A stretch of 56,311 nucleotides of DNA, the filler included, from Sluysia triapertura (Eukaryota), in NCBI GenBank assembly GCA_046118255.1. It is 4 parts of 4 records of this genome, joined end to end, with 100 filler letters (N's around TTAATTAATTAA, not from the genome) between each part and the next. Parts side by side here need not be neighbours in the genome. Positions count along the whole stretch, not along the records: positions 26,388 to 38,337 come from JBJNIA010153604.1; 3 more parts are not named here. One strand, given 5' to 3'. A model generated the notes under the pieces. It was not told the DNA's origin, did no database searches, and saw nothing but the letters and a program-made list of their open reading frames with translations. Positions within the stretch are counted from its first letter, which is position 1. Each line of letters begins with the position of its first letter. Shown here piece after piece: positions 26,288-38,337 of the stretch. The position numbers were made by a program, and so were the translations under genes.

Positions 26288-26920
26288 NNNNNNNNNNNNN
26301 NNNNNNNNNNNNNNNNNNNNNNNNNNNNNNNTTAATTAATTAANNNNNNNNNNNNNNNNNNNNNNNNNNNNNNNNNNNNNNNNNNNNAAAGTTAATAGTT
26401 TTTTAATGGTTATAAAGTTAAAATGTTCTCATTTAGCTAAAGTTTTAAACTTATTAAATAAAAAAATAAAATAAAATGCTAGTAATTTTTGTGTAATTAA
26501 AAAATTAACTAAAAATAATTTTAATTTAATATCCACAAGCTATAAAAAGTCCTCCCAACATCTAAACTTTCTGGATACTCATATTCTTAGTGGTTGTTGC
26601 GTCACTCCTGGTTTGTTTTGTCTTAGTTAGATTGTAGTGTCTTTGACTTTATCATAAACATTATTGTTATTTTTGTCATTTTAGTGATTCTTAGCATTTA
26701 GTAAAGATTTTCAATGACAATAAATTATATTATTTAATTTTTGTTTAATACTACATTATTGACTTAGTTTTGATTTAATTTTCAAGAATTAAATTTGGGG
26801 TATTCGTTATTAATATTAAGAGAGAATATTACCATAAAATTATATCTGATATACTGAATATTGAAATTATTAAGATTCTTTTAAGCTGATCAAAATAATA
26901 ATAATATTGAGTTGTAATAA

Positions 26921-27184
26921 CTAACAAATTTTAAAGACGCAACATTTATGTTTATTGCTTAACTTATAATTGTTATATATAGATAGCGAATTTGTGGGAT
27001 TCATTCGTAAAGAAAGTAATAATTTGTTGAATCTATTCATATGATCATTTGAATTGCAATTACTGATAGGATTAGAAATTGTTTCGAAAATATTATGGCC
27101 GTATTGGCATGAGTGGCCAAATCTACGACATATACCAAAATCGTCTGTAATGGATTGACATATCCCGACTTTGTTGTTACTCAT
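26921..27184 (-). pseudogene. CCCH zinc-finger coding relic (copy C)
   Basis: KVGICQSITDDFGICRRFGHSCQYGHNIFE (27160-27095), C-x9-C-x6-C-x3-H; about 300 bp downstream of the RRM relic on the same strand. Confidence 0.75.
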
Positions 27185-27459
27185 ATAATTTTCATTTTTT
27201 GACTGTACATCAAATGTTGTATTTGGTGAGATAACTATATCTGAATGGAAGCTAGCTTATCCATATCACTTGTATTAAATGCTTTACAATGCTTTCACAA
27301 TTTGGAAAATCTTACATTTCTAAAAGTATTATCAAAATGAAAATGACAACAAATTTCTCTGAATGGGTGAAATTGGAATTTATATGACACTTCGGTATTT
27401 GCTAAATTGAAAACATTAGTTTAATCTAAAACATATTTTTGTTGAAGATGGATCTGGGA

Positions 27460-27682
27460 GTAACAACATTAATTTCCTTCTAATTCTTTTCCATTTAAAT
27501 CAATTTTTTGCTTTATCTGCATCAAATGCGTTTTCGAAAGTAACAAAGCCGAATCCTTTTTATCCTTTTTTATTAAAAATAATTTCCAAATCAAGAATTA
27601 CATCATGGTCTTTCAAGTGTTGTTTTAAATCCATTTAACGGTAGCTGAATGGAATATTTGATATATGCATTCTTTTAGGGTC
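27460..27682 (-). pseudogene. RBFOX/Fox-1-type RRM pseudogene, intronless
   Basis: [57 protein letters not shown](fs)DLNGKELEG versus RBFOX [45 protein letters not shown]; two stops and a frameshift. Confidence 0.88.
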
Positions 27683-28259
27683 ACTTATTCGACTTACATA
27701 ATTCAAGTGATAGTTTTCGTTTAATAAATTCATTAAGTATAAGAATAAAATTGTTGTTTTCTAATTGATAATTATTTTTTATTTTTTTTTAAATTGATTT
27801 ATAGCACCATTTAACTAATAGTTGTCCATCTAAGTGTCTCTAATTTCTATTTTAAGTAATCTGTATCGCTTTTTAAAATTTTTACTCACTGTCTGGTTTT
27901 AATTCTATCGCTAAAATTGTGACTAATGATAAAATTAAATTAACTTTTGTAATTTTCAACTTTGTTTTTCACTCTCATTGGATGACGAGTCAAATCAGTT
28001 GTTCAATAATCGATTGAGATTTTTAATTAACAGCAGCTGTCATTAGTCGACAGTTAACATGATAATTTGAATTGTATTTAATTAAAACTGTCGGCTAATG
28101 ACAGGTTGTCTGAANNNNNNNNNNNNNNNNNNNNNNNNNNNNNNNNNNNNNNNNNNNNNNNNNNNNNNNNNNNNNNNNNNNNNNNNNNNNNNNNNNNNNN
28201 NNNNNNNNNNNNNNNNNNNNNNNNNNNNNNNNNNNNNNNNNNNNNNNNNNNNNNNNNNA

Positions 28260-28942
28260 AACTGCATGAACTTTATATATGTTTCTCTTCTTTACATAAA
28301 ATTCTTTCTTTACATGACAAAATCTTTCAATAATATTAGTAAAATGTAACAAATAATGATAAAATAATTGAACTGAAAACGCATAAAGGAAACATAACAT
28401 TCTCTTTCTTTGTATCTTTTATTTCGTAAAATTTAAAATACATAAGCAAACAATACAAACATAAATTTCTTTTGTGGAAACAGCTCTCTTTCTTAAAAAT
28501 AAAGATCTTTATTACTTTTTTTCTTAAACTAAAAGTTGTGTGTAACTATTTCTTGAAATTAATATTCTTTTATGAAATGGTGAAAATGTAGAGAATGTTA
28601 TGGAAAGAATAAAATTTGTAAAATTAATAAAATTGGAAATATAAGAAGAAGTTCCTTTTTGATTATAATGTTTAAAATGTTTTGAAATGTGAATTTAATG
28701 TTTTTTAATGATGTTAAAGAATGAATGTTTAACAATTGTGAACTAAAAATGTTTTAGATTAAATTTGAAATTTATGTTTAATGGTTTTAGATGTAATTAT
28801 AATTTTAATGTTATGAGATTGTGAATTTAAAATGTTTAAAATGTAAAAGGATTTTAATGAATCTGAAAACTGAAATATGAAATGTTAAGAAAAGTATGTA
28901 TAAAAAAGATTTAAATTTTGAATAAAAAGTTTTGTCACCACA
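28260..28942 (-). mobile_element. LTR-like terminal segment of the CCCH element family, copy C
   Basis: Begins TGTGGTGACAAAAC; homologous to 19740-20301. Confidence 0.7.
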
Positions 28943-29559
28943 GTTATGCTAAATGAAATCATAAAGTAAGTAAAATATATAATTCTATATCGAGTAAACT
29001 ACTAAATTTTAAAAAAATGAATGTTTCTTAAAAGTTTTTACATAAACTTTATTTCTACAATCGTAATTGTATTAATTTTGCTATAGTTTAAATAAAGTTT
29101 TTTCTTCTTATTTGAGTTCATTATTGGGGATTGAAAGATAAGATCGTAAGCAATCGAAATTTGCACTTCCATCCTGTCATCAAAATGAGTATTAACTTAA
29201 GAATCTAGAATAAATTTAGAGTAACAGAAGAAAGTTGAACAATAGTTTTTAATTGAATTATAGAAAGGAAATAATAAAAATATAAGAACACAATTTAAAC
29301 CAAGATAAAATAAAGATTAAATTTACTTAAAATATTTTTACACTGGTGAGGATACAGACGGATTGAAGTTTTTAAAATATTAAATAAGTATATAAATATT
29401 ATAAGTTTCAACAAAAGAGGCTTAAAATAATATATAGGTATTAATGTAAAGTTTTCTATTTGTACACAAATTTTATATTTATACACAGGTTTATATTTTT
29501 TGTACACAAGTGTGTATCAGGATTGGTACTAGTCATCATATTGATTCTGATAAAGATAA

Positions 29560-30900
29560 AAAGGATAGGTGAATAAATAAAAATAAATGAATGAACGTGC
29601 AATAAGCTGAGCCCAAATGACGGAACTTATATCGGCCATGAATCGTTCTTTGCTTAATTAAAATTTAAAGATAAAAAAATCCTCAAATGAAAATAAGCTT
29701 TTAGATTTTATTGCCGAATATAATGAAGAAACAGAATCCTTAAGATGGATTACAAAGGAAAAATGTTTAAAATTTGCTTCAAGACGCCCATCAAATGTAT
29801 TCAAATTCATCCCAGCGTAAGAAAAAAATGACTTAAATTTTAAAATTGATTTTAGTGCTTTTGTTGGGATTGCCCAATTCTGGATCAAGAGATAAGAGAG
29901 AAACATAGAGTACCATAAAATGAAGGAAGAACTAATACAAAGTGATGGATTGAACATTATAAACATTGACGAAGATGAACACACGTATGGTAATGTTAAC
30001 AGCTGAAGAATACCTTGGAGTTTCAAAGAGTGCTGAAACCCCTGGAAGAGTGAGATAGGTTTGGAAAAATTTAGAAGTATTAGGGTATCTATAAACTTCT
30101 GAACCTTGAGGTCATTTAAGGCCTTATTGACCTTTAAGTAATTTTTAAACCTTGATAAGCATTTTCGTAACCTTATAGAGTAGTTTAAATCCTTAAAATA
30201 CTTGAGAATAAAAATCATTGTAACTAATAATTAAGATAAATTTGATAAAAGAACGTTTTTATGAATAACGTTTTAATGCGGAATGCTATGCTAAAGTTGA
30301 AACTGTCTATGTATTTGTCTTAAAAAGACCTTTCGGTGAAAATATTGTTTGACCGAGTTCATGCAATGAAAGCCTTAATTTTTAATTATGGAATGTTGAA
30401 TATGATATGATTGCTATGAAAGAGGGGAATCTAGAAGTGAATGGTTTGTTTGAGAATACGAACTTTAAACATTTTCCATAAGAAAATTGGGTGTGAAATA
30501 TCAAAAATCAATTGAATTCAAAAAGCTAAAATAAAATTCATTATTTTTCTGCATGTTAACAATACTGGTGACTATTATTTTAATGTGAAAATTAAGTGAA
30601 ATAAAAGTAGGTTGAATAGAGTAAAGAAAAATAATAGATGATCATAAATCAATTTTTGTATTCTCTATCTCGTAAAGTTTGATAAACCGTGCCAAGTAAC
30701 TGTCATTGTTATTATTCTCAAAGAATGTTGTAACGATTTGTGTGAGAGAATGTGTGATTGTAAACCTTAAAAGTGATTGGATAGTGAAAAAGTGTGAAAT
30801 TAGTATTGGAAATTTTACACTCATTAAGAATATCAATCGTATTACCAAATAGAGGTCAGTGTTGATTCCATAATATAGTAAAATTTTTGATTTTTTAATG
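29560..30900 (+). repeat. Dispersed repeat (possible gag-like 5' relic); inverted copies at about 35240-35700, 36270-36830 and 38580-38750
   Basis: Shared blocks AAGAATACCTTGGAGTT, AACTTCTGAACCTT, TTCTCAAACAAACCA and CATGAACTCG; decayed frame LLDFIAEYNEETESLRWITKEKCLKF. Confidence 0.6.
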
Positions 30901-31559
30901 TACAATATAATTTCATTTATGATAATAAATTAAAATTACAAATAAATATAAATTAAATATCGTTTTCATTTAATATTATATTAAAATATTTATTTATTTA
31001 TCATTGCAAAAGGAATTCCCACATTTTTTCAAATAAATACTTCTAAGAAATCCCTAATTTTTTTATTTTTGGGCGACTCCCTGTTCAATTTTTTCCAAGA
31101 AATATTAGATTTTGATAAATTATTAATTATTATTATTTAGGTAAATTTAAATTAGAATCATTTTTTGAATTTTGGAATAATCCCTGCTCAAATTGTTTCT
31201 AAGGAGATATTAGAATTTCTTTTAGAGTGTAAAATTTTCTTTGGGAAATTATTACTAGTTTCGTCACCACTGCTTTTAGTGTATCGATAAGGTAGTAGCA
31301 TTCCATTCATTTGATTCTCATAATTTACAAATACAGATTTAATCTAAACTTGTAATTTGATATAATAATTTATTGTGAATACCGAATTTCATCTTTTTAT
31401 GATTCCTTAGTAATTGTTTTATTGGAATATATATTTTTTCTTGTTTTGATTTGTAATATATACACATTTTGGAATTAATACTGCACGAATTTTAGATTTA
31501 ATCTAACAAAAAGCGCAAGACTTTAAGCTTTAAATTTGGTGCCATTAAGATTTCCTGAA

Positions 31560-32620
31560 GGAATTTAATTATATCTTCATTATACTTAATAATAATTATT
31601 TTATTGTTATTCTTAATGTTAATTACTTCATCTTTACCATAGTGATTTAAGGCACTTTAAGTCATACTTAATATTACTAGTACAAAAAATAAATTGTAAT
31701 AAAATACATTCATATTAATGTCCTAATATCATATTTAGGTTGTTGAGTGTAAATAAATGTTCACATCTAATCACACCTTTCTCTATTGTATTTGCAGAAG
31801 GAACTAATGTTCGTTATTACGCAAATGGTTGAGTGCAATACAGAGTGTGTGAACAATATATACCGTAAGACATTCTCCAAACCTAGCTTCAACATTTACT
31901 TAAGTATCATCACCAAAGTGACACCTTAATTTGATTTTTTTATAAAATGTATTTTGTGAAAGAGTGTTACATGAATATTAAATGTAATCACTGATAAAAG
32001 TGTTTCACACTTTCTATATTTAAAGCAGTTTTTAAATCACAGTATTTTGATTTATAAATTTCGTTAAATAAACTCTTGTATTCCATATTTAAATCAGTCA
32101 ACAAAATATTATTTACTATACTTAATTTTAAAGTTTTAGAAGTTTTTATACTTATTAATAACAATATTTGACATACGAACAAACGTAGGTGATAACGGAT
32201 TACATAAAGTAGATTCTGTTGTACTAGAAGGTACCTTTTTGATTAAGCACGTGTCAAAGCATTCTTTAATTCGTCTACATAACATTAAGCAGCAACACGG
32301 CTATCTTTCACAAGTGTAGCAGTAACTTTAGACCTATCAGCACCATTTCGAAGAGATTGGAGCCTATCAAGCAACATACTATGCAGATCTTTCCAACTGG
32401 GTTTCTCACGAGTTCCTACATAATTTAAATTAACATACTTTCTACGAAATTTATAATAAATTCTTTTTTAAATTTTCTCAGTTAAATTTAAATAAATGCT
32501 TCGCAATATGTTCTCGACAAAGTTATATCATTTTCTAAGTAATAAACAAAACTGTCTTTAAACATATTCCGATGCATCAGGAACCTGTAATACTTTCGGC
32601 TGATTTATATTTTCGTTATT
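31560..32620 (-). pseudogene. Heavily decayed coding relic, possible fourth CCCH-family copy with a gag-like upstream part
   Basis: Fragments FGEC(fs)YGIYCSHT near 31840-31885; FFVLVILSMT*SALNHYGKDEV resembling FFE*VVILSK*I*NILFNEGNNEI of copy A; and EKPSWKDLHSMLLDRLQ near 32355-32410. Confidence 0.35.
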
Positions 32621-34169
32621 AATTTAGGAATTTTTACTAAAATATAGATTACAATATTATAATAAAAATATATACTTAAAACTTTTTAAATTAAAACTAA
32701 ATTAATAAAAATTACATTAAAATACACCATATTCTAATTTATTATTGTTTATTATCTCTTCCTATGTGACATAAATCTGCGGCATCACCACTTTTCATAA
32801 TTTTCAAAACAGATACAATTTACATAAATCGAGACAAAACAATTATAATAAATAAAAATAGAAGGATAGAAAGACTGCAAAAATAATATGATGACAATGA
32901 TGTTTTATATAATAGAAACATTAAATTTTAGATTATAGTTGCGTACATGTTGATGTAAGTATTATTATTAGTGTTAGAGTGTAAATATGTATAAATCTGT
33001 AAAATTTTTTTGTTTTATGATTAATTATTATTATATATTAATACTTATTATAAAAAATTACATTTAAATTAAATTAAAATGGAATTTAAATAAGTTAAAT
33101 AATTGACAAATTGATTAAATTATTTTAGAAAATTAATAAAGTAACTATTTTGTTTAAATTAATAAAGTAATTTTTGTTTTAATAAATTATTTTTTAGAAT
33201 ATTAATAAAGAAGATATTAATAAAAAATATTTTTGTTTTAAATAAATTATTTTTAGAGAAACCGTATTGAAGATAAATTTAATATAAATAGAAGATAAAA
33301 TCATAGATAAATTTAGAATTTTTTAAAGTTAAAACTTGAAGAAAACGGCAGAAATTTTGAAGCGAGATTTTGTTTTTAGAAGAATAAATTTAAAGAAGAG
33401 TTCCTGACTAAAATTTTGAATTCAAATTCCATGTCAAAGTAATTAAATTTTTCATAAGTGTTAACCGTTTCACTCTATAAGGAAACGTAAAAACTACTCA
33501 AAATCATTTTTATTTTAATGTAACACTTTAATATGGGTTGCGAAAATTCATTTCTAAAATCTTGTAAAACGGCCACCGAGGTTGAATTCGTTAGCTAAAT
33601 TATTATTTATATTACAATTTTTTATAAGAATTCTTAGAATTAATTTTTATTTCTGTCGATTAATATACCTTAAGAGTGTTTTTAATCAATAGTTTAATGT
33701 AAAGTACAATTGACATGATTATCGTGATTAACTTACAATTGATATGACGTGATTAAATTATTATTTGTGCATACAATTGATGTGATTAACATAAACATTT
33801 GTGTAAGCATTGATTAATTTTATTGTAATTATTGATTTTTATTTTATTTTAAATTTTGAAGTGAACAATTTTGGAATTAATTTAATTGATTTAATTTTTG
33901 AATTGGAATTAATTTAATTTTTAAAGGTAAGCATTATTCAAATATTTAATTCAATATTTATTTAATATTTAATTGTTTAAATTTAAAAGCCAAGGTCGTA
34001 AATTTTATACATTATCACAAATTTTTACACAATAGAATTTATACGGATTTCACAAGTTTTAACAAGTGTTTGGGATACAGTTGCACACCGCTGTATATTA
34101 TTTCAGATCAACTTTAATCAGTCTTGGCTTTTAATAAATTATTTTGTAACATTAGTTTATTTCATTTTA

Positions 34170-34835
34170 AGGTTCGATATTAAAACAGTATCTTCGTAAA
34201 ATATACTTAAAATACATTTAGTAAAATACTTTGAGACTTTTAACAGTTTCATGCAAAATCCATTTTTAAACTGAATTGCCTAAAAATTTAATTAACTAAT
34301 AGTTAATTAACGAAAAATTTTATAAATTTATTATCGATTATATTTTATTTAATAAATATACCTTCACGAAAAAGGTCTTTATTATTATTGAATAGATATT
34401 AATTTTCATAGTTTTAAAATACGTAAATTTATCACTATAAGTAAAGTTTTAGTCAAATTATAATTTTGACCACGTAAAAGCATTTATCTCAAACACAAAT
34501 CCTTTTAATAGAATTTCAGTAAAATCATTTATAAACGACTTTTATTGTTATAATTAAAATTACAAACGGGTTTCAGTGCTATAACTAAAATACCTCCAGA
34601 TTCTAGATTTAATTACTGTGAAATGTCCTTATAAATTTGAAAATGAATTAAATATACACAGACCTTGACTTTAGAGCATTTGTAAACTTAAGAAAATATT
34701 AAGATATTTTCCTTAGTGAAAATCCTTTCAATTATATCTATAAATCCAACAGCTAGCCCTAACTGGTAGGCCTAGTACGTTGGTGGACTCACGTTAAAAT
34801 CCTACTTTATTCTATCTTCTTTTTCATTCCCACAG
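34170..34835 (+). mobile_element. LTR fragment of the same family, no recognisable PBS
   Basis: CTAGCCCTAACTGGTAGGCCTAGTACGTTGGTGGACTCAC near 34755-34792 is a diverged reverse complement of the conserved LTR block at about 44190 and 46172. Confidence 0.65.
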
Positions 34836-35355
34836 TATTATTTGTTAGATATTACTTTTTCTTTTAGCACGGATTATTGTGTATTTAACATTATTATAAA
34901 AGTTATTATTAATTTTTTTTAATTGTTATCATTTTTAGTTGTCTCATTTATATTATTGTTAAAGCGGAGATTTAACAGAATTTGTATTTGAATTTTTTGT
35001 AATTAGTATAACATTGAGTTTTGTTAATTTGAATTAAAGAATCTAACCTCTGTTGGGGTTGAATAGTTATTGTTACTATTTAAATTTAAATTTAAATTTA
35101 TTTTGATAAGTACTGAAAATATTAGGATTCCGTTTAAGTAAATTAAACTATTACTGACTTATTGTAACAGTTTAATTCAAAGGAGCAACAAAATAACAAT
35201 CATTATTATTGTTAAGATACATAAAAATAATGAATTTAATTGATTTTCGGTTTTTCACACCAAATTTTCTTATAGAATATATTTAAGGTTTTTATTCTCA
35301 AACAAACCACTCTAAAGACACTTCAAACTTATTGATAGATTTTCCTCTTTCAAAG

Positions 35356-35509
35356 TGTTAGACGTCAAAATGAAATGACCGGTAATCGAACCCGGACTCT
35401 CGCTGCGCAATTCGATTCACTATCCATGAGCCATCAGCCATGTCTAACAATTTTATTATGTTATAGTCACTATTACTGTCATAATTCTACATGGCACTTT
35501 ACCTCAACA
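35356..35509 (-). mobile_element. 154-bp solo LTR containing a tRNA-like sequence, degenerate 4-bp TSD
   Basis: TGTTAGAC...CCTCAACA termini; flanks AAAG/GTAG versus a single ATAG at the paralogous empty site (30414-30417, minus); A-box-like TGGCTCATGG and B-box GGTTCGATTACC on the minus strand. Confidence 0.75.
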
Positions 35510-36053
35510 GTAGCAATCATATGATATTCAATTCATTATATTTTCATCATTCTGAGTATTAAAAATTCAACATTCCATAATTAAATTTTGACTGCTCAAT
35601 ATTAAGGCTTTCATACATGAACTCGTCAAACCATAACTTCATCGAGAAGTTTTTGATTAAAATGATTTTAAAACATTTCAAACATCTTATCATTTAAAGC
35701 CTCAACATTTTTATATTAGTACAACATGCACCGAATTAAATTAACTTTTACAAAAACAAATTTGTCAAATTAAATGAATCAGATGACTATGCAAGTGTTT
35801 CGTTTAAAAACTTTGAAATAAATTTCAATTTATTCTCTTAGTTTGACTGACACACTTTTATTTTTGCACACTTAGCAAAATGGCTTATCTTATTGTGAAT
35901 TCACCTAACGAGTCCGATCTATATTTATTGATGGGATTGATAGGATTGTGCTAAAAAGTAAATTATACTTAGTTAAACCATGGATAAGGAACCAACTACA
36001 GACTAAATCAGTCTCAAGGGTTACACAACGTTTAAAATCGCCACTTTTTATGC

Positions 36054-36202
36054 TGTTAGACTTCATTAAATGGACTGACCAAGATTCTAACCCGGGACCT
36101 CTCGCTTCACATCTGTGCTCTGACCACTGATCTACCAGCGCTGTCTAACAACTTTAGAATATCATAGTCAATTATACTATCATTATTTTAAATGGCACTT
36201 TA
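36054..36202 (-). mobile_element. Second, truncated copy of the tRNA-containing LTR
   Basis: Same TGTTAGAC..GTCTAACA..ATGGCACTTT layout. The minus strand reads CTGGTAGATCAGTGGTCAGAGC...GGTCCCGGGTTAGAATCTTGGTCAG and is followed by GCATAAAAAGTGGCGA (possible PBS relic). Confidence 0.7.
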
Positions 36203-38010
36203 GGCGCTTATTTCAAGATTTTGCTCAAAATTCTTTGTAAATTTCTTTTTACAAAATTATTTGTAAAATATTCATCGCATGAACTCGGTTAAACCTTATC
36301 TTTATCAAAGGATCTTTTTAAAACTCATACATACTCAGTTGAAATTTTAACACAGAATTCCCTATTTAAAGTCATTCACACAAACGTTATTTTTCGTAAT
36401 TGAGTTAATTAAGCTTTTAATTAATTTATTAATTACTTTGACTTAATTTTTTTTGTGTTTAAAGGTTTTATTGTGTTTGTAAAGTTGTTAGATACTTTGG
36501 AAAATTTTCAGGATGTTCTATATGTTTTCATCTTCACCATTCTGATTCCTTTTTCTACTTTTTATGTTACTATTAACGTCTCAAATTTTAGTTCCTGGAA
36601 ATATTTTTAAATGGTTCCTCGAGGATTCAAAAAGGTTATCAAGGTCTCAAATGAATCTAAGGTTCAGAAGTTCAAAGGTACCTTTACACTTTAAAAAATC
36701 TTTCTAAACCCTTCGTAAGCCTTCATAGATGTCATAATACCCTATAAAGTCTTTGGAACTCCAAGGTATTCTTTGGTTTCAAAATGATTATAAACATTTT
36801 CTTCATCATTCTTGCTCTTGAAATATTTAATTATTATGTTACATCTTTATTTAAAATTATTAACAATAACTCAATAATTAAATTAGCTAAAAAATTTCGA
36901 TATATTTTCAGAAATCGTAAAATAGGTACAAATTATTTATTATTCTTTAATTGCAACAAACTCTCAATGTTCACAGAATGAATATAAATTCTAATTATAA
37001 ATTAGAGTCTTTACAAATTCAATAAACAAGGTCTACACTGTTCCGACTTAAATAAATAATAAGAATAATACAATATTAATTTACTTTATTTAAACAAAGT
37101 CTTACATGATTTCTATATTCACAAGATTAAGTATAACTAATCACAAATTTTCTTATTTTTATAATGACATTTATTCAACCAAAAAATTACTTCCTTAATT
37201 TAAAATAATAACAAGGTGTCAATAATATAATAATTAAAAAATCAAATCCAAGCATTATTAAAAGTCTCCGCTTAAACTAATATAAGAAAATAACTAAAAT
37301 GAAAAATGACTAAATTTCGAAGTTAACAATAAAATTTATACAATATTACGACCACAAAAATCTATTGAAAGTGTAGGGAATTCATCACACAAAACTCATC
37401 AAAGTTCATCATATGAAAACACTTCACATGTACACAGACTATTAAACAAATTACTAAACTCATTCAAAAAACAAACATGATCATCACACCTAATTATCAT
37501 AAACTACAGTTATTATTATTATTATTATTACAATTCAACTCGTATTAAAATATATTAAAAAAATTATTGTTATATAATATGATTATCAAGTAATAACTTT
37601 TATAATAACTTTCATAATAAATTTCGACATCAACAATTCAGTATTAATAAATATGTTAACCACATAATTGTTATCATTGTTGTTGTTCCTTTTATCCCTA
37701 TTGTTGTCAGTGCTTTATTATTATTTAACTTTGGATTTATTTCTTTGTTTCCTGACATTGAGATCGCCTTTGTTATTCTACCATTTCTTCTCTTATTTGA
37801 AAAATATTTTTATACAGAAATGGAATATTTTGCGCTATTCGTCGTTTTTCGTATTCAATTTTAAACTAGATGTAAATGAAACTTGAATACACTAATGAAA
37901 AGTTTATTGTTGGTATTTATCACGCAAAGGAGTCAGAATTTCAAATAATATTTCGGTTTATGTGCAGCAGAAGACTATTACAGGGTTGAAGATTACAAAG
38001 GATTAGTAGA

Positions 38011-38337
38011 GCTTACTACAAAATTTCCCTAGAAATCGAAGATTTTGAATCAGCGTATTTAGCCTGTGAAGCCTTAGGTCGTTTATATCGACACTTGAAA
38101 GAGTACGACGATATTTAGAAATATTTGCCAATACTGCTGAACAACACTTATACAAAGAATACCATAGTAGAGCTTGCCGTGCACTTGGTGATGTTTATAA
38201 TGAAATGGGTGAATTTAACAAAGCTTCGGCATTTTTTGCACAATCTTTCGGTATGTCACGTGACGGAGTTAATAAGAATACTAATCATATTGATGAAGCT
38301 AGAATACTGTTTGGTGTTTCACGTGGTAATAATTTAG
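38011..38337 (+). pseudogene. TPR-repeat gene fragment resembling TTC29, frameshifted, running into an assembly spacer
   Basis: AYYKISLEIEDFESAYLACEALGRLYRHLKEYDD(fs)YLEIFANTAEQHLYKEYHSRACRALGDVYNEMGEFNKASAFFAQSF..IDEARILFGVSRG; recalls TTC29 ACEA..LGDIYNEKG.YNKAS..F.Q.F..DE....G. Confidence 0.7.

What the first reader, a model, noticed from the sequence alone, without database searches (positions are those of the whole stretch)
26921..27682. Intronless RBFOX-like RRM directly upstream of a CCCH finger
Seen: a clear Fox-1-type RRM with two stops and a frameshift, about 300 bp upstream of and co-oriented with the CCCH finger. Known: RBFOX proteins bind (U)GCAUG, regulate splicing and have a single RRM without zinc fingers. 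Inference: a chimeric RRM-CCCH protein assembled inside a mobile element by capture of a processed rbfox mRNA.
Basis: partly seen in the sequence, partly recalled or inferred. Interest (0 to 1): 0.75.

Follow-up and report, generated by a model that had tools for sequence, protein, structure and literature searches.

The report
Dead repeat copy with Fox-1 RRM
This is one decayed copy of a many-copy repeat in an AT-rich animal genome that carries an intronless RNA-binding domain of the RBFOX (Fox-1) type followed by a CCCH zinc finger; whether the repeat ever encoded a working fused protein, and what moves it, could not be settled.

Summary
On the minus strand, 27682-27470 encodes a Fox-1/RBFOX-type RRM. 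It is broken by two in-frame TAA stops and at least one frameshift. A C-x9-C-x6-C-x3-H finger lies 310 bp downstream at 27160-27095, co-oriented. PDB searches with the RRM pieces return only RBFOX1, RBFOX2 and ASD-1, in colinear order. The finger is only weakly Unkempt-like.

The new result comes from laying contigs of a public run of the same organism. The stretch is multi-copy: 20-36 distinct contigs per site, 85-99% alike. In 88-98% of the depth both TAA stops read as sense codons (Glu, Ser). About half the depth lacks the base that causes the frameshift. So the founder had an open, more canonical Fox-1 RRM, and this copy is decaying neutrally.

A single independent processed pseudogene is therefore ruled out. 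I found no contig bridging the two domains, no intact ORF and no element termini. No reverse transcriptase or transposase, poly(A) tail or firm target-site duplication was found either. The finger-bearing part has no relative among 1.84 billion proteins. Interest is moderate.

The parts
27731..27733 (-). Candidate start codon (ATG), 17 codons before the D-P-K-R at the start of the RRM. The frame is closed upstream by stops at 27763-27761 and 27781-27779.
   Evidence: Translation. One contig joint lands at 27734. Its use as a start codon is inferred.
27470..27682 (-). Fox-1/RBFOX-type RRM, contiguous (no intron) and broken. RNP2 lies around 27670-27650 and RNP1 at 27559-27536.
   Evidence: translation; only RBFOX1, RBFOX2 and ASD-1 are hit, colinearly. 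Residues equivalent to S122 and F126 of Fox-1 are present (numbering from PMC5737849).
27635..27637 (-). In-frame TAA, private to this copy. 88% of the laid depth (21 contigs) reads GAA, Glu.
   Evidence: 27637 A>C; codon reading.
27560..27562 (-). In-frame TAA at the codon equivalent to Fox-1 Ser155, private to this copy. 98% of the depth (36 contigs) reads TCA, Ser.
   Evidence: 27561 T>G; S155 numbering from PMC5737849.
27500..27502 (-). Frameshift site, with TGA in the old frame. One base at 27502 is absent in about 45% of the depth (2 contigs). Without it the reading is colinear with Fox-1 (L-x-G-x-x-x-E-G).
   Evidence: table 4; translation. The colinearity with Fox-1 rests on my own knowledge of its sequence.
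27185..27469 (-). Linker of about 95 codons with stops in all frames. The TGA at 27297-27295 reads TGC (Cys) in 97% of the depth. The Cys/His-rich traces here have no database support.
   Evidence: no Pfam or PDB hit.
27095..27160 (-). CCCH zinc finger, C-x9-C-x6-C-x3-H, weakly Unkempt-like.
26924..27256 (-). 111-codon stop-free piece holding the finger, with an ATG at 27184. Its last 8 codons run into the abundant repeat, so the native C-terminus is unknown.
26563..26944 (.). Very abundant repeat of about 380 bp that abuts or interrupts the unit. Contig boundaries lie at 26563 and 26944. A CAACAT direct repeat at 26556-26561 and 26940-26945 is a possible, unproven target-site duplication.
   Evidence: summed depth 13,000-222,000; 40-87 contigs per site; 74 loose ends at 26944..
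26446..26562 (-). Possible continuation (3' part) of the unit beyond the abundant repeat. Summed depth returns to 635-2269. If the repeat is removed, the ORF ends 6 codons later.
   Evidence: Inferred.
27781..28011 (-). Low-copy segment upstream of the unit. It is skipped or replaced in other copies.
   Evidence: summed depth 34-183; joints 27734>28032, 27683>28037 and 27781>27906.
28012..28114 (-). Multi-copy segment with a 17-nt inverted repeat (28036-28108). Two contigs join it directly to the RRM start. It is cut by the N run at 28115.
   Evidence: summed depth 1127-1366; the joints above. (DNA hairpin, -17.1 kcal/mol, z -5.4).

Best explanation
The stretch 26946-27780, and probably 28012-28114 and 26446-26562 as well, is one dead member of a dispersed, middle-repetitive family.

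The founder of that family carried an intronless coding unit derived from host genes. It had a short N-terminus and a Fox-1/RBFOX-type RRM with the RNA-contacting residues intact. About 95 codons further on it had a CCCH finger with Unkempt-like spacing.

The unit was copied dozens of times. The likely carrier is a non-autonomous mobile or retroposed element, whose class cannot be seen in this piece. Each copy has since decayed on its own. This copy gained two TAA stops, one or two frameshifts and several replacements that move the RRM away from the Fox-1 consensus. It now abuts or is interrupted by a 380-bp high-copy repeat.

Shown: Fox-1 affinity, multi-copy status, private stops, neutral decay of this copy.

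Inferred: that RRM and finger formed one protein of about 270 aa; that it bound GCAUG-like RNA; that the origin was a spliced rbfox transcript.
For: RRM identity:
- The RRM pieces hit only the Fox-1 family, colinearly.
- RNP1 and RNP2 are read directly from the sequence.

Multi-copy status:
- 2908 contigs of run X1 lie on 26388-28114 at 85-99% identity.
- 20-36 distinct contigs cover single sites in the RRM and finger regions.
- All bins from 26968 to 27779 are covered.
- A 313-nt contig matches 27754-28066 without a difference, so the run is of the same organism.

This copy against the majority:
- Both TAA stops, four replacements in the RRM (to L, Y, G, V) and the linker TGA are private to the window.
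- Two of those replacements (to G and V) restore Fox-1 residues and two (to L and Y) are conservative matches to them.
- Among the listed RRM differences the ratio is 1 synonymous to 8 non-synonymous or nonsense, which is neutral decay.

Frame and finger:
- The RRM N-part and the finger lie in the same frame (27799-3n), as expected if two indels between them cancel out.
- No A-run or duplication sets the RRM apart from the finger.
Against: - Among the few pieces the tool printed, no contig bridges RRM and finger. Joints show many internal deletions among the copies.
- Apart from 27502, no common indel is reported between 27184 and 27500 (table 4). The frame changes in the linker may therefore be shared by most copies, which would mean the founder was already a pseudogene there.
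- Two linker TAA stops (27471-27469 and 27423-27421) are not shown to be private.
- The 111-codon open frame is not significant on its own.
- No reverse transcriptase, transposase or other element protein was found in the piece.
- No terminal repeats, poly(A) tail or firm target-site duplication were found.
- The finger piece has no relative in protein, metagenome or viral collections.
- No RNA run holds the stretch.
- An open consensus proves only an intact ancestor, not selection.
Confidence: 0.55

Rival explanations
1. The copies are processed pseudogenes of a lineage-specific host gene. A functional, germline-expressed host gene encodes an RRM-CCCH protein, its mRNA was retroposed many times by LINE machinery, and the window holds one dead retrocopy. 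No gene-carrying mobile element is involved.
For: - The unit is intronless and compact, with a short leader before the ATG.
- The pattern is star-like: most differences from the majority are private to the window at 90% of depth or more.
- No element-type proteins or termini were found.
Against: - No such protein, nor any relative of the finger part, exists among 1.84 billion representatives or in the word search.
- There is no poly(A) tail in the visible 3' part (26388-26562).
- Coverage shows no 3' bias of the kind 5' truncation would give.
- Multi-copy sequence upstream (28012-28114) is joined to the RRM start in two contigs.
Confidence: 0.2
2. There was never a fused protein. An rbfox retro-fragment and an unrelated Cys/His-rich stretch merely lie side by side as passengers in a larger repeat, such as a gene-fragment-capturing transposon or a segmental duplication, that was non-coding when it was amplified.
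For: - The finger scores below every curated threshold.
- The open frame is not significant.
- Frame changes in the linker are not reported as variable among copies (table 4).
- The linker has no database match.
- The fold prediction gave nothing.
Against: - The RRM N-part and the finger share a frame.
- The linker TGA is Cys in 97% of the depth.
- Three independent methods point to CCCH.
- The founder RRM kept the Fox-1 RNA-contact residues.
Confidence: 0.2
3. It is a single, independent processed pseudogene of rbfox that landed by chance near a CCCH-like ORF.
For: The RRM is intronless and broken.
Against: The RRM region is covered by 15-36 distinct contigs per site at 85-95% identity, so it is not a lone copy. 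No A-run or direct repeat flanks the RRM.
Confidence: 0.03

Closest known systems
RBFOX/Fox-1 family splicing regulators (RBFOX1-3, C. elegans FOX-1/ASD-1)
   Same: The RRM has the family's RNP2 and RNP1 and the residues equivalent to S122 and F126. In most copies the residue equivalent to S155 is also present. Only Fox-1 family chains are hit in the PDB.
   Different: It is multi-copy, broken and intronless. It has a very short N-terminus and no Fox-1 C-terminal region, and a CCCH finger follows instead. The window RRM is about 59% identical to human RBFOX1 over the two searched pieces, well below the conservation usual for true orthologues (the latter from my own knowledge).
Unkempt CCCH fingers (Pfam zf-CCCH_UNK; PDB 5elh)
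   Same: Identical C-x9-C-x6-C-x3-H spacing and the G-I-C..T-D..G-x-C..G..C...H pattern of finger 3.
   Different: Scores are below the thresholds (17.1 bits against 31.1; E 0.65). Only one finger is supported, there is no RING, and no tandem three-finger cluster is shown.
ORF1 proteins of non-LTR retrotransposons (RRM plus zinc knuckle types; modular ORF1 evolution, PMC4120745)
   Same: A repeat-borne small protein that combines an RRM with a zinc-binding nucleic-acid module. Domain shuffling in ORF1 is documented.
   Different: ORF1 RRMs are non-canonical and their knuckles are CCHC (my own knowledge). Here the RRM is a canonical, host-like Fox-1 RRM and the finger is CCCH. No ORF2 or reverse transcriptase is seen downstream within the piece.
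Host gene or retrogene fragments captured and amplified by transposons (e.g. Helitrons, PMC4224331), and chimeric retrogenes made by LINE template switching (PMC2104539)
   Same: Intronless host-derived coding fragments from apparently two different genes, joined and present in many copies.
   Different: No Helitron, terminal-repeat or LINE hallmarks could be located. The only structured candidate is the 17-nt inverted repeat at 28036-28108, next to an N run.

Membership tests
Fox-1/RBFOX RRM | RNP2 (L/M-H-V/I-S-N-I-P-F) and RNP1 (K-G-F-G-F-V-T-F), with best similarity to Fox-1 proteins rather than to other RRMs | tested here: met
   (motifs read directly); all RRM-bearing PDB hits are RBFOX1, RBFOX2 or ASD-1.
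Fox-1/RBFOX RRM | A complete, uninterrupted RRM (beta1 to beta4) in one reading frame | tested here: not met
   This copy has two TAA stops, a frameshift at 27502 and a probable second one near 27480. Most other copies lack the two stops.
Fox-1/RBFOX RRM | Fox-1 C-terminal domain after the RRM; orthology with the host rbfox locus | tested here: not met
   No Pfam family on any downstream piece. The host locus was not available.
Fox-1/RBFOX RRM | Binding of (U)GCAUG | not testable with these tools
   The contact residues are conserved. The unit's own sense strand holds no GCAUG.
CCCH zinc finger (Unkempt-like) | C-x(4-15)-C-x(4-6)-C-x3-H spacing | tested here: met
   C-x9-C-x6-C-x3-H at 27160-27095, the same spacing as Unkempt finger 3 in the 5elh alignment.
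CCCH zinc finger (Unkempt-like) | Score above the Pfam gathering threshold | tested here: not met
   zf-CCCH_UNK scores 17.1 bits against a cut-off of 31.1, E 0.005.
CCCH zinc finger (Unkempt-like) | Tandem finger clusters and a C-terminal RING | tested here: not met
   The linker and tail pieces give no hit.
Non-LTR retrotransposon ORF1 | Followed by an ORF2 with endonuclease and reverse transcriptase | tested here: inconclusive
   Nothing coding lies in 26388-26920, and the ORFs of the piece that were scanned give no reverse transcriptase hit. The piece ends 530 bp downstream of the ORF.
Non-LTR retrotransposon ORF1 | Dispersed multi-copy family | tested here: inconclusive
   Multi-copy status is shown. 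Dispersal is suggested only by contigs that run on into unlike sequence.
Processed pseudogene / retrocopy | No introns relative to the parent gene | tested here: inconclusive
   The RRM is contiguous over 27682-27503. The parent gene was not available. That vertebrate RBFOX RRMs are split by introns is my own knowledge.
Processed pseudogene / retrocopy | 3' poly(A) tract and flanking target-site duplication | tested here: not met
   No A-run after the RRM, after the finger ORF or in 26388-26562. The true 3' end may lie beyond the piece.
Gene-capturing DNA transposon (Helitron, Pack-type) | Diagnostic termini (terminal inverted repeats with a duplication, or 5'-TC...hairpin-CTRR-3') | tested here: inconclusive
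   Only the inverted repeat at 28036-28108 was found. One side is hidden by N and the other by the piece edge.

The most novel reading that the evidence does not exclude
A so far undescribed non-autonomous mobile element family encodes its own sequence-specific RNA-binding protein. That protein would be built from a host Fox-1 RRM and an Unkempt-type CCCH finger. It would be a host-derived counterpart of ORF1p, able either to package the element's RNA or to interfere with host GCAUG-dependent splicing.
Probability: 0.15. Interest if true: 0.75.

Novelty: new member of a known kind. Interest (0 to 1): 0.4.

Why it matters
Repeats that pick up and multiply host gene fragments are well known, and one more dead copy is ordinary.

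What is unusual is the cargo. The Fox-1 RRM is among the most sequence-specific RRMs known. Here its contact residues were intact in the founder, and it sits next to a second RNA-binding module.

If intact, expressed copies exist, a repeat family would be producing dozens of potential competitors or mimics of a master splicing regulator. It would also be a clear case of an element-borne RNA-binding protein assembled from host parts. If none exist, this is simply an amplified pseudogene.

Tried and rejected
- Ciliate genetic code. Both RRM stops are TAA in a piece of 24.7% G+C, but TGA-only ORFs across the piece are junk, so this was rejected.
- tRNA and Rfam scans found nothing.
- Word search with the 111-aa finger piece found no candidate.
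- Exhaustive HMMER search against 1.84 billion representatives gave two spurious repeat-protein hits only.
- The metagenome scan gave one chance hit in an AT-rich bacterial contig that shares an 8-residue word.
- The viral contig scan found nothing.
- AlphaFold of the finger piece without an alignment gave pLDDT 30, which is unusable, so no fold search was run.
- Extra CCCH fingers in the linker. By eye there are Cys/His traces across two frames, and majority letters add two Cys. No Pfam or PDB support was found, so this is kept only as a lead.
- A search for further copies inside the piece found none.
- A search for GCAUG in the unit's sense strand found none.
- The 19-aa RNP1 piece is too short for the search tools and could not be given read-through, so its match to Fox-1 rests on direct reading and my own knowledge.
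Only per-site differences are reported.
- The N run at 28115-28258 was left untouched.
- No stretch was taken for human.

Full report
SCOPE. I used only 26388-38337. The piece has 24.7% G+C, no tRNA genes and no Rfam family. The N run at 28115-28258 was left as it is. Nothing was taken for human.

1. Everything described here is on the minus strand.

The RRM. In the frame 27799-3n the translation reads from a possible ATG at 27733 into [12 protein letters not shown] (RNP2). It then meets a TAA at 27637-27635. It continues through D-L-K-Q...[12 protein letters not shown] and meets a second TAA at 27562-27560. Then comes [10 protein letters not shown]...D-A-D-K-A-K (RNP1 and helix 2), and the frame ends in TGA at 27502-27500. 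The domain continues one frame over as ..D-L-N-G-K-E-L-E-G-N up to TAA at 27471-27469. A beta4-like I-N-V-V-T-P-R lies in the third frame, so a second frameshift near 27475-27482 is likely.

PDB support. The two RRM pieces long enough to search return only RBFOX1, RBFOX2 and C. elegans ASD-1. They match at consecutive positions of the same chains: 2err 14-42, E 0.005, and 45-67, E about 1. No other kind of RRM appears even at E up to 10. Identity to RBFOX1 over these two pieces is 23 of 39. The RNP1 piece is 19 aa, below the tools' minimum. Its match to Fox-1 is read directly and rests on my own knowledge.

The finger. Its Cys and His codons start at 27160, 27130, 27109 and 27097, giving C-x9-C-x6-C-x3-H. 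It lies 310 bp after the RRM and in the same frame as the RRM's first part. It sits inside a 111-codon stop-free piece, 27256-26924, with an ATG at 27184. The evidence that it is a CCCH finger is weak but points one way:
- Pfam zf-CCCH_UNK, E 0.005, 17.1 bits against a cut-off of 31.1.
- The best PDB match is Unkempt finger 3, with the same spacing and the pattern G-I-C...T-D..G-x-C...G..C...H, at E 0.65.
- The nearest ESM Atlas clusters are all zf-CCCH, scores 0.81-0.88.

The open frame is not significant by itself: 10.7% of simulated pieces of this composition have one of 111 codons or more.

2. WHAT LAYING CONTIGS ADDED. One public run (X1, organism coded, Logan contigs) holds a third of the stretch's sampled words. 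Laid on 26388-28114 it gave 2908 contigs at 85-99% identity. A 313-nt contig matches 27754-28066 without a difference, so the run is of the same organism.

Copy number. Every bin from 26968 to 27779 is covered. Single sites there are covered by 9-36 distinct contigs, 20-36 at the best-covered sites. The tool warns that summed depth is not a copy number. I therefore take the contig counts as a lower bound of a few dozen distinct copies. The listed pieces differ from the window by about 6-12%.

Differences between this copy and the majority, read codon by codon:
- 27637 A>C in 88% of the depth turns the first TAA into GAA (Glu).
- 27561 T>G in 98% turns the second TAA into TCA (Ser). This is the codon equivalent to Fox-1 Ser155, a residue at a hydration site of the RNA interface (PMC5737849).
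- One base at 27502 is absent in about 45% of the depth. Without it the reading becomes colinear with Fox-1.
- Four further replacements are private to the window. The majority reads L, Y, G and V there. G and V restore Fox-1 residues, and L and Y are conservative matches to them.
- Among the listed RRM differences, one is synonymous and eight are non-synonymous or nonsense.

So the founder of the family had an open and more canonical Fox-1 RRM, and the window's copy has drifted without constraint. In the linker, the TGA at 27297-27295 reads TGC (Cys) in 97% of the depth.

3. SURROUNDINGS.

Downstream. The unit meets a very abundant repeat at 26563-26944. Summed depth there reaches 222,000, and 40-87 contigs cover each site. 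74 contigs run on into unlike sequence at 26944. A contig of the RRM-finger family stops aligning at 26946. A CAACAT direct repeat at 26556-26561 and 26940-26945 could be a target-site duplication of a nested insertion. If that segment is removed, the ORF ends six codons later. However, the repeat does not coincide exactly with the contig boundaries, and no contig joining 26562 to 26945 was listed. The abundant repeat could therefore also be the unit's own tail, or merely a neighbour.

Upstream. Coverage drops at about 27780. The segment 27781-28011 is low-copy and is skipped or replaced in other copies. The segment 28012-28114 is again multi-copy and is joined directly to 27734 or 27683 in two contigs. 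It holds a 17-nt inverted repeat that folds far better than shuffles (z -5.4) and is then cut by the N run.

Element hallmarks. No reverse transcriptase, transposase or other element protein was found on the longest stop-free pieces of the piece. There is no further copy of the unit within 28259-38337. No A-run follows the RRM, the finger ORF or the visible 3' part.

4. RELATIVES ELSEWHERE. The finger piece has no relative in any collection searched:
- The word search found no candidate.
- Among 1.84 billion representatives there were only two spurious repeat proteins.
- The viral contig scan found nothing.
- The one metagenome locus is a bacterial gene sharing an 8-residue word by chance.

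The fold prediction was useless at pLDDT 30. The linker pieces have no Pfam or PDB match. My by-eye reading of further fingers there stays an untested lead. A paper search found no report of a Fox-1 RRM in a repeat or transposon.

5. READING. The best-supported account is a dead member of a middle-repetitive family whose founder carried an intronless, host-derived Fox-1 RRM with a CCCH finger behind it.

For one fused ORF in the founder:
- The RRM N-part and the finger share a frame.
- One linker stop and both RRM stops are private to this copy.
- Three methods agree on CCCH.

Against it:
- No bridging contig was listed.
- Two linker TAA stops are unexplained.
- No variable indel is reported in the linker. 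The frame changes there may be common to the family, which would make the founder already a pseudogene in that part.
- An open consensus shows an intact ancestor, not selection.

The rivals are a family of processed pseudogenes from an unannotated host RRM-CCCH gene, and mere passenger fragments in a non-coding repeat. The data at hand exclude neither. The lone processed pseudogene is excluded.

If the protein existed, the conserved Fox-1 contact residues predict GCAUG-type binding. The unit's own sense strand has no GCAUG, which does not favour a self-packaging role.

6. COMPARISON AND NOVELTY. The RRM is Fox-1-like in sequence but not a member of the host RBFOX gene set. It is multi-copy and has no Fox-1 C-terminal region.

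The arrangement recalls retrotransposon ORF1 proteins, whose modules are known to be shuffled (PMC4120745). Those have non-canonical RRMs and CCHC knuckles (my own knowledge), and no ORF2 is seen here.

It also recalls host fragments captured and amplified by Helitrons (PMC4224331) and chimeric retrogenes made by LINE template switching (PMC2104539). No hallmark of either was found.

I file it as a new member of a known kind: a repeat-amplified, host-derived coding fragment. There is a 15% chance that it is an element-borne RNA-binding protein of a new type.

Noticed in passing
window 26563-26944: Very abundant repeat of about 380 bp with no obvious poly(A) tail or terminal inverted repeats. 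Summed contig depth reaches about 222,000, against about 18 for a contig that matches the window without a difference. 40-87 distinct contigs cover each site. A possible 6-bp duplication (CAACAT) flanks it.
   Followed up: partly
window 28036-28108: 17-nt inverted repeat with one mismatch and a 45-nt spacer, in a multi-copy segment. As single-stranded DNA it folds at -17.1 kcal/mol, z -5.4 against shuffles. It lies directly beside the N run.
   Followed up: partly
window 30006-30581 and 35190-36773: Two copies of another repeat in inverted orientation, 74-100% complementary in blocks. The second copy is three times longer, apparently through insertions.
   Followed up: no
window 35427-35501 and 36128-36202: 75-nt direct repeat (77% identity) inside the longer inverted arm. 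The neighbouring sequence translates like a tRNA-derived SINE head, but ARAGORN calls no tRNA.
   Followed up: no
window 29661-30230 (-): 190-codon stop-free frame, longer than in any of 300 simulated pieces of this composition. It has no Pfam family and partly overlaps an inverted-repeat arm. It may be the antisense of something coding, or a repeat ORF.
   Followed up: partly
window 38070-38336 (+): 89-codon frame running off the piece's edge that looks like a TPR-repeat exon of a host gene. Pfam TPR_12 and TPR_8 are weak; ESM Atlas TPR clusters, including TTC29-like, score 0.94-0.97.
   Followed up: partly
window 32288-32467 (-): 60-codon piece with protein-like composition (..GTREKPSWKDLHSMLLDRLQSLRNGADRSK..) and no Pfam hit.
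   Followed up: no
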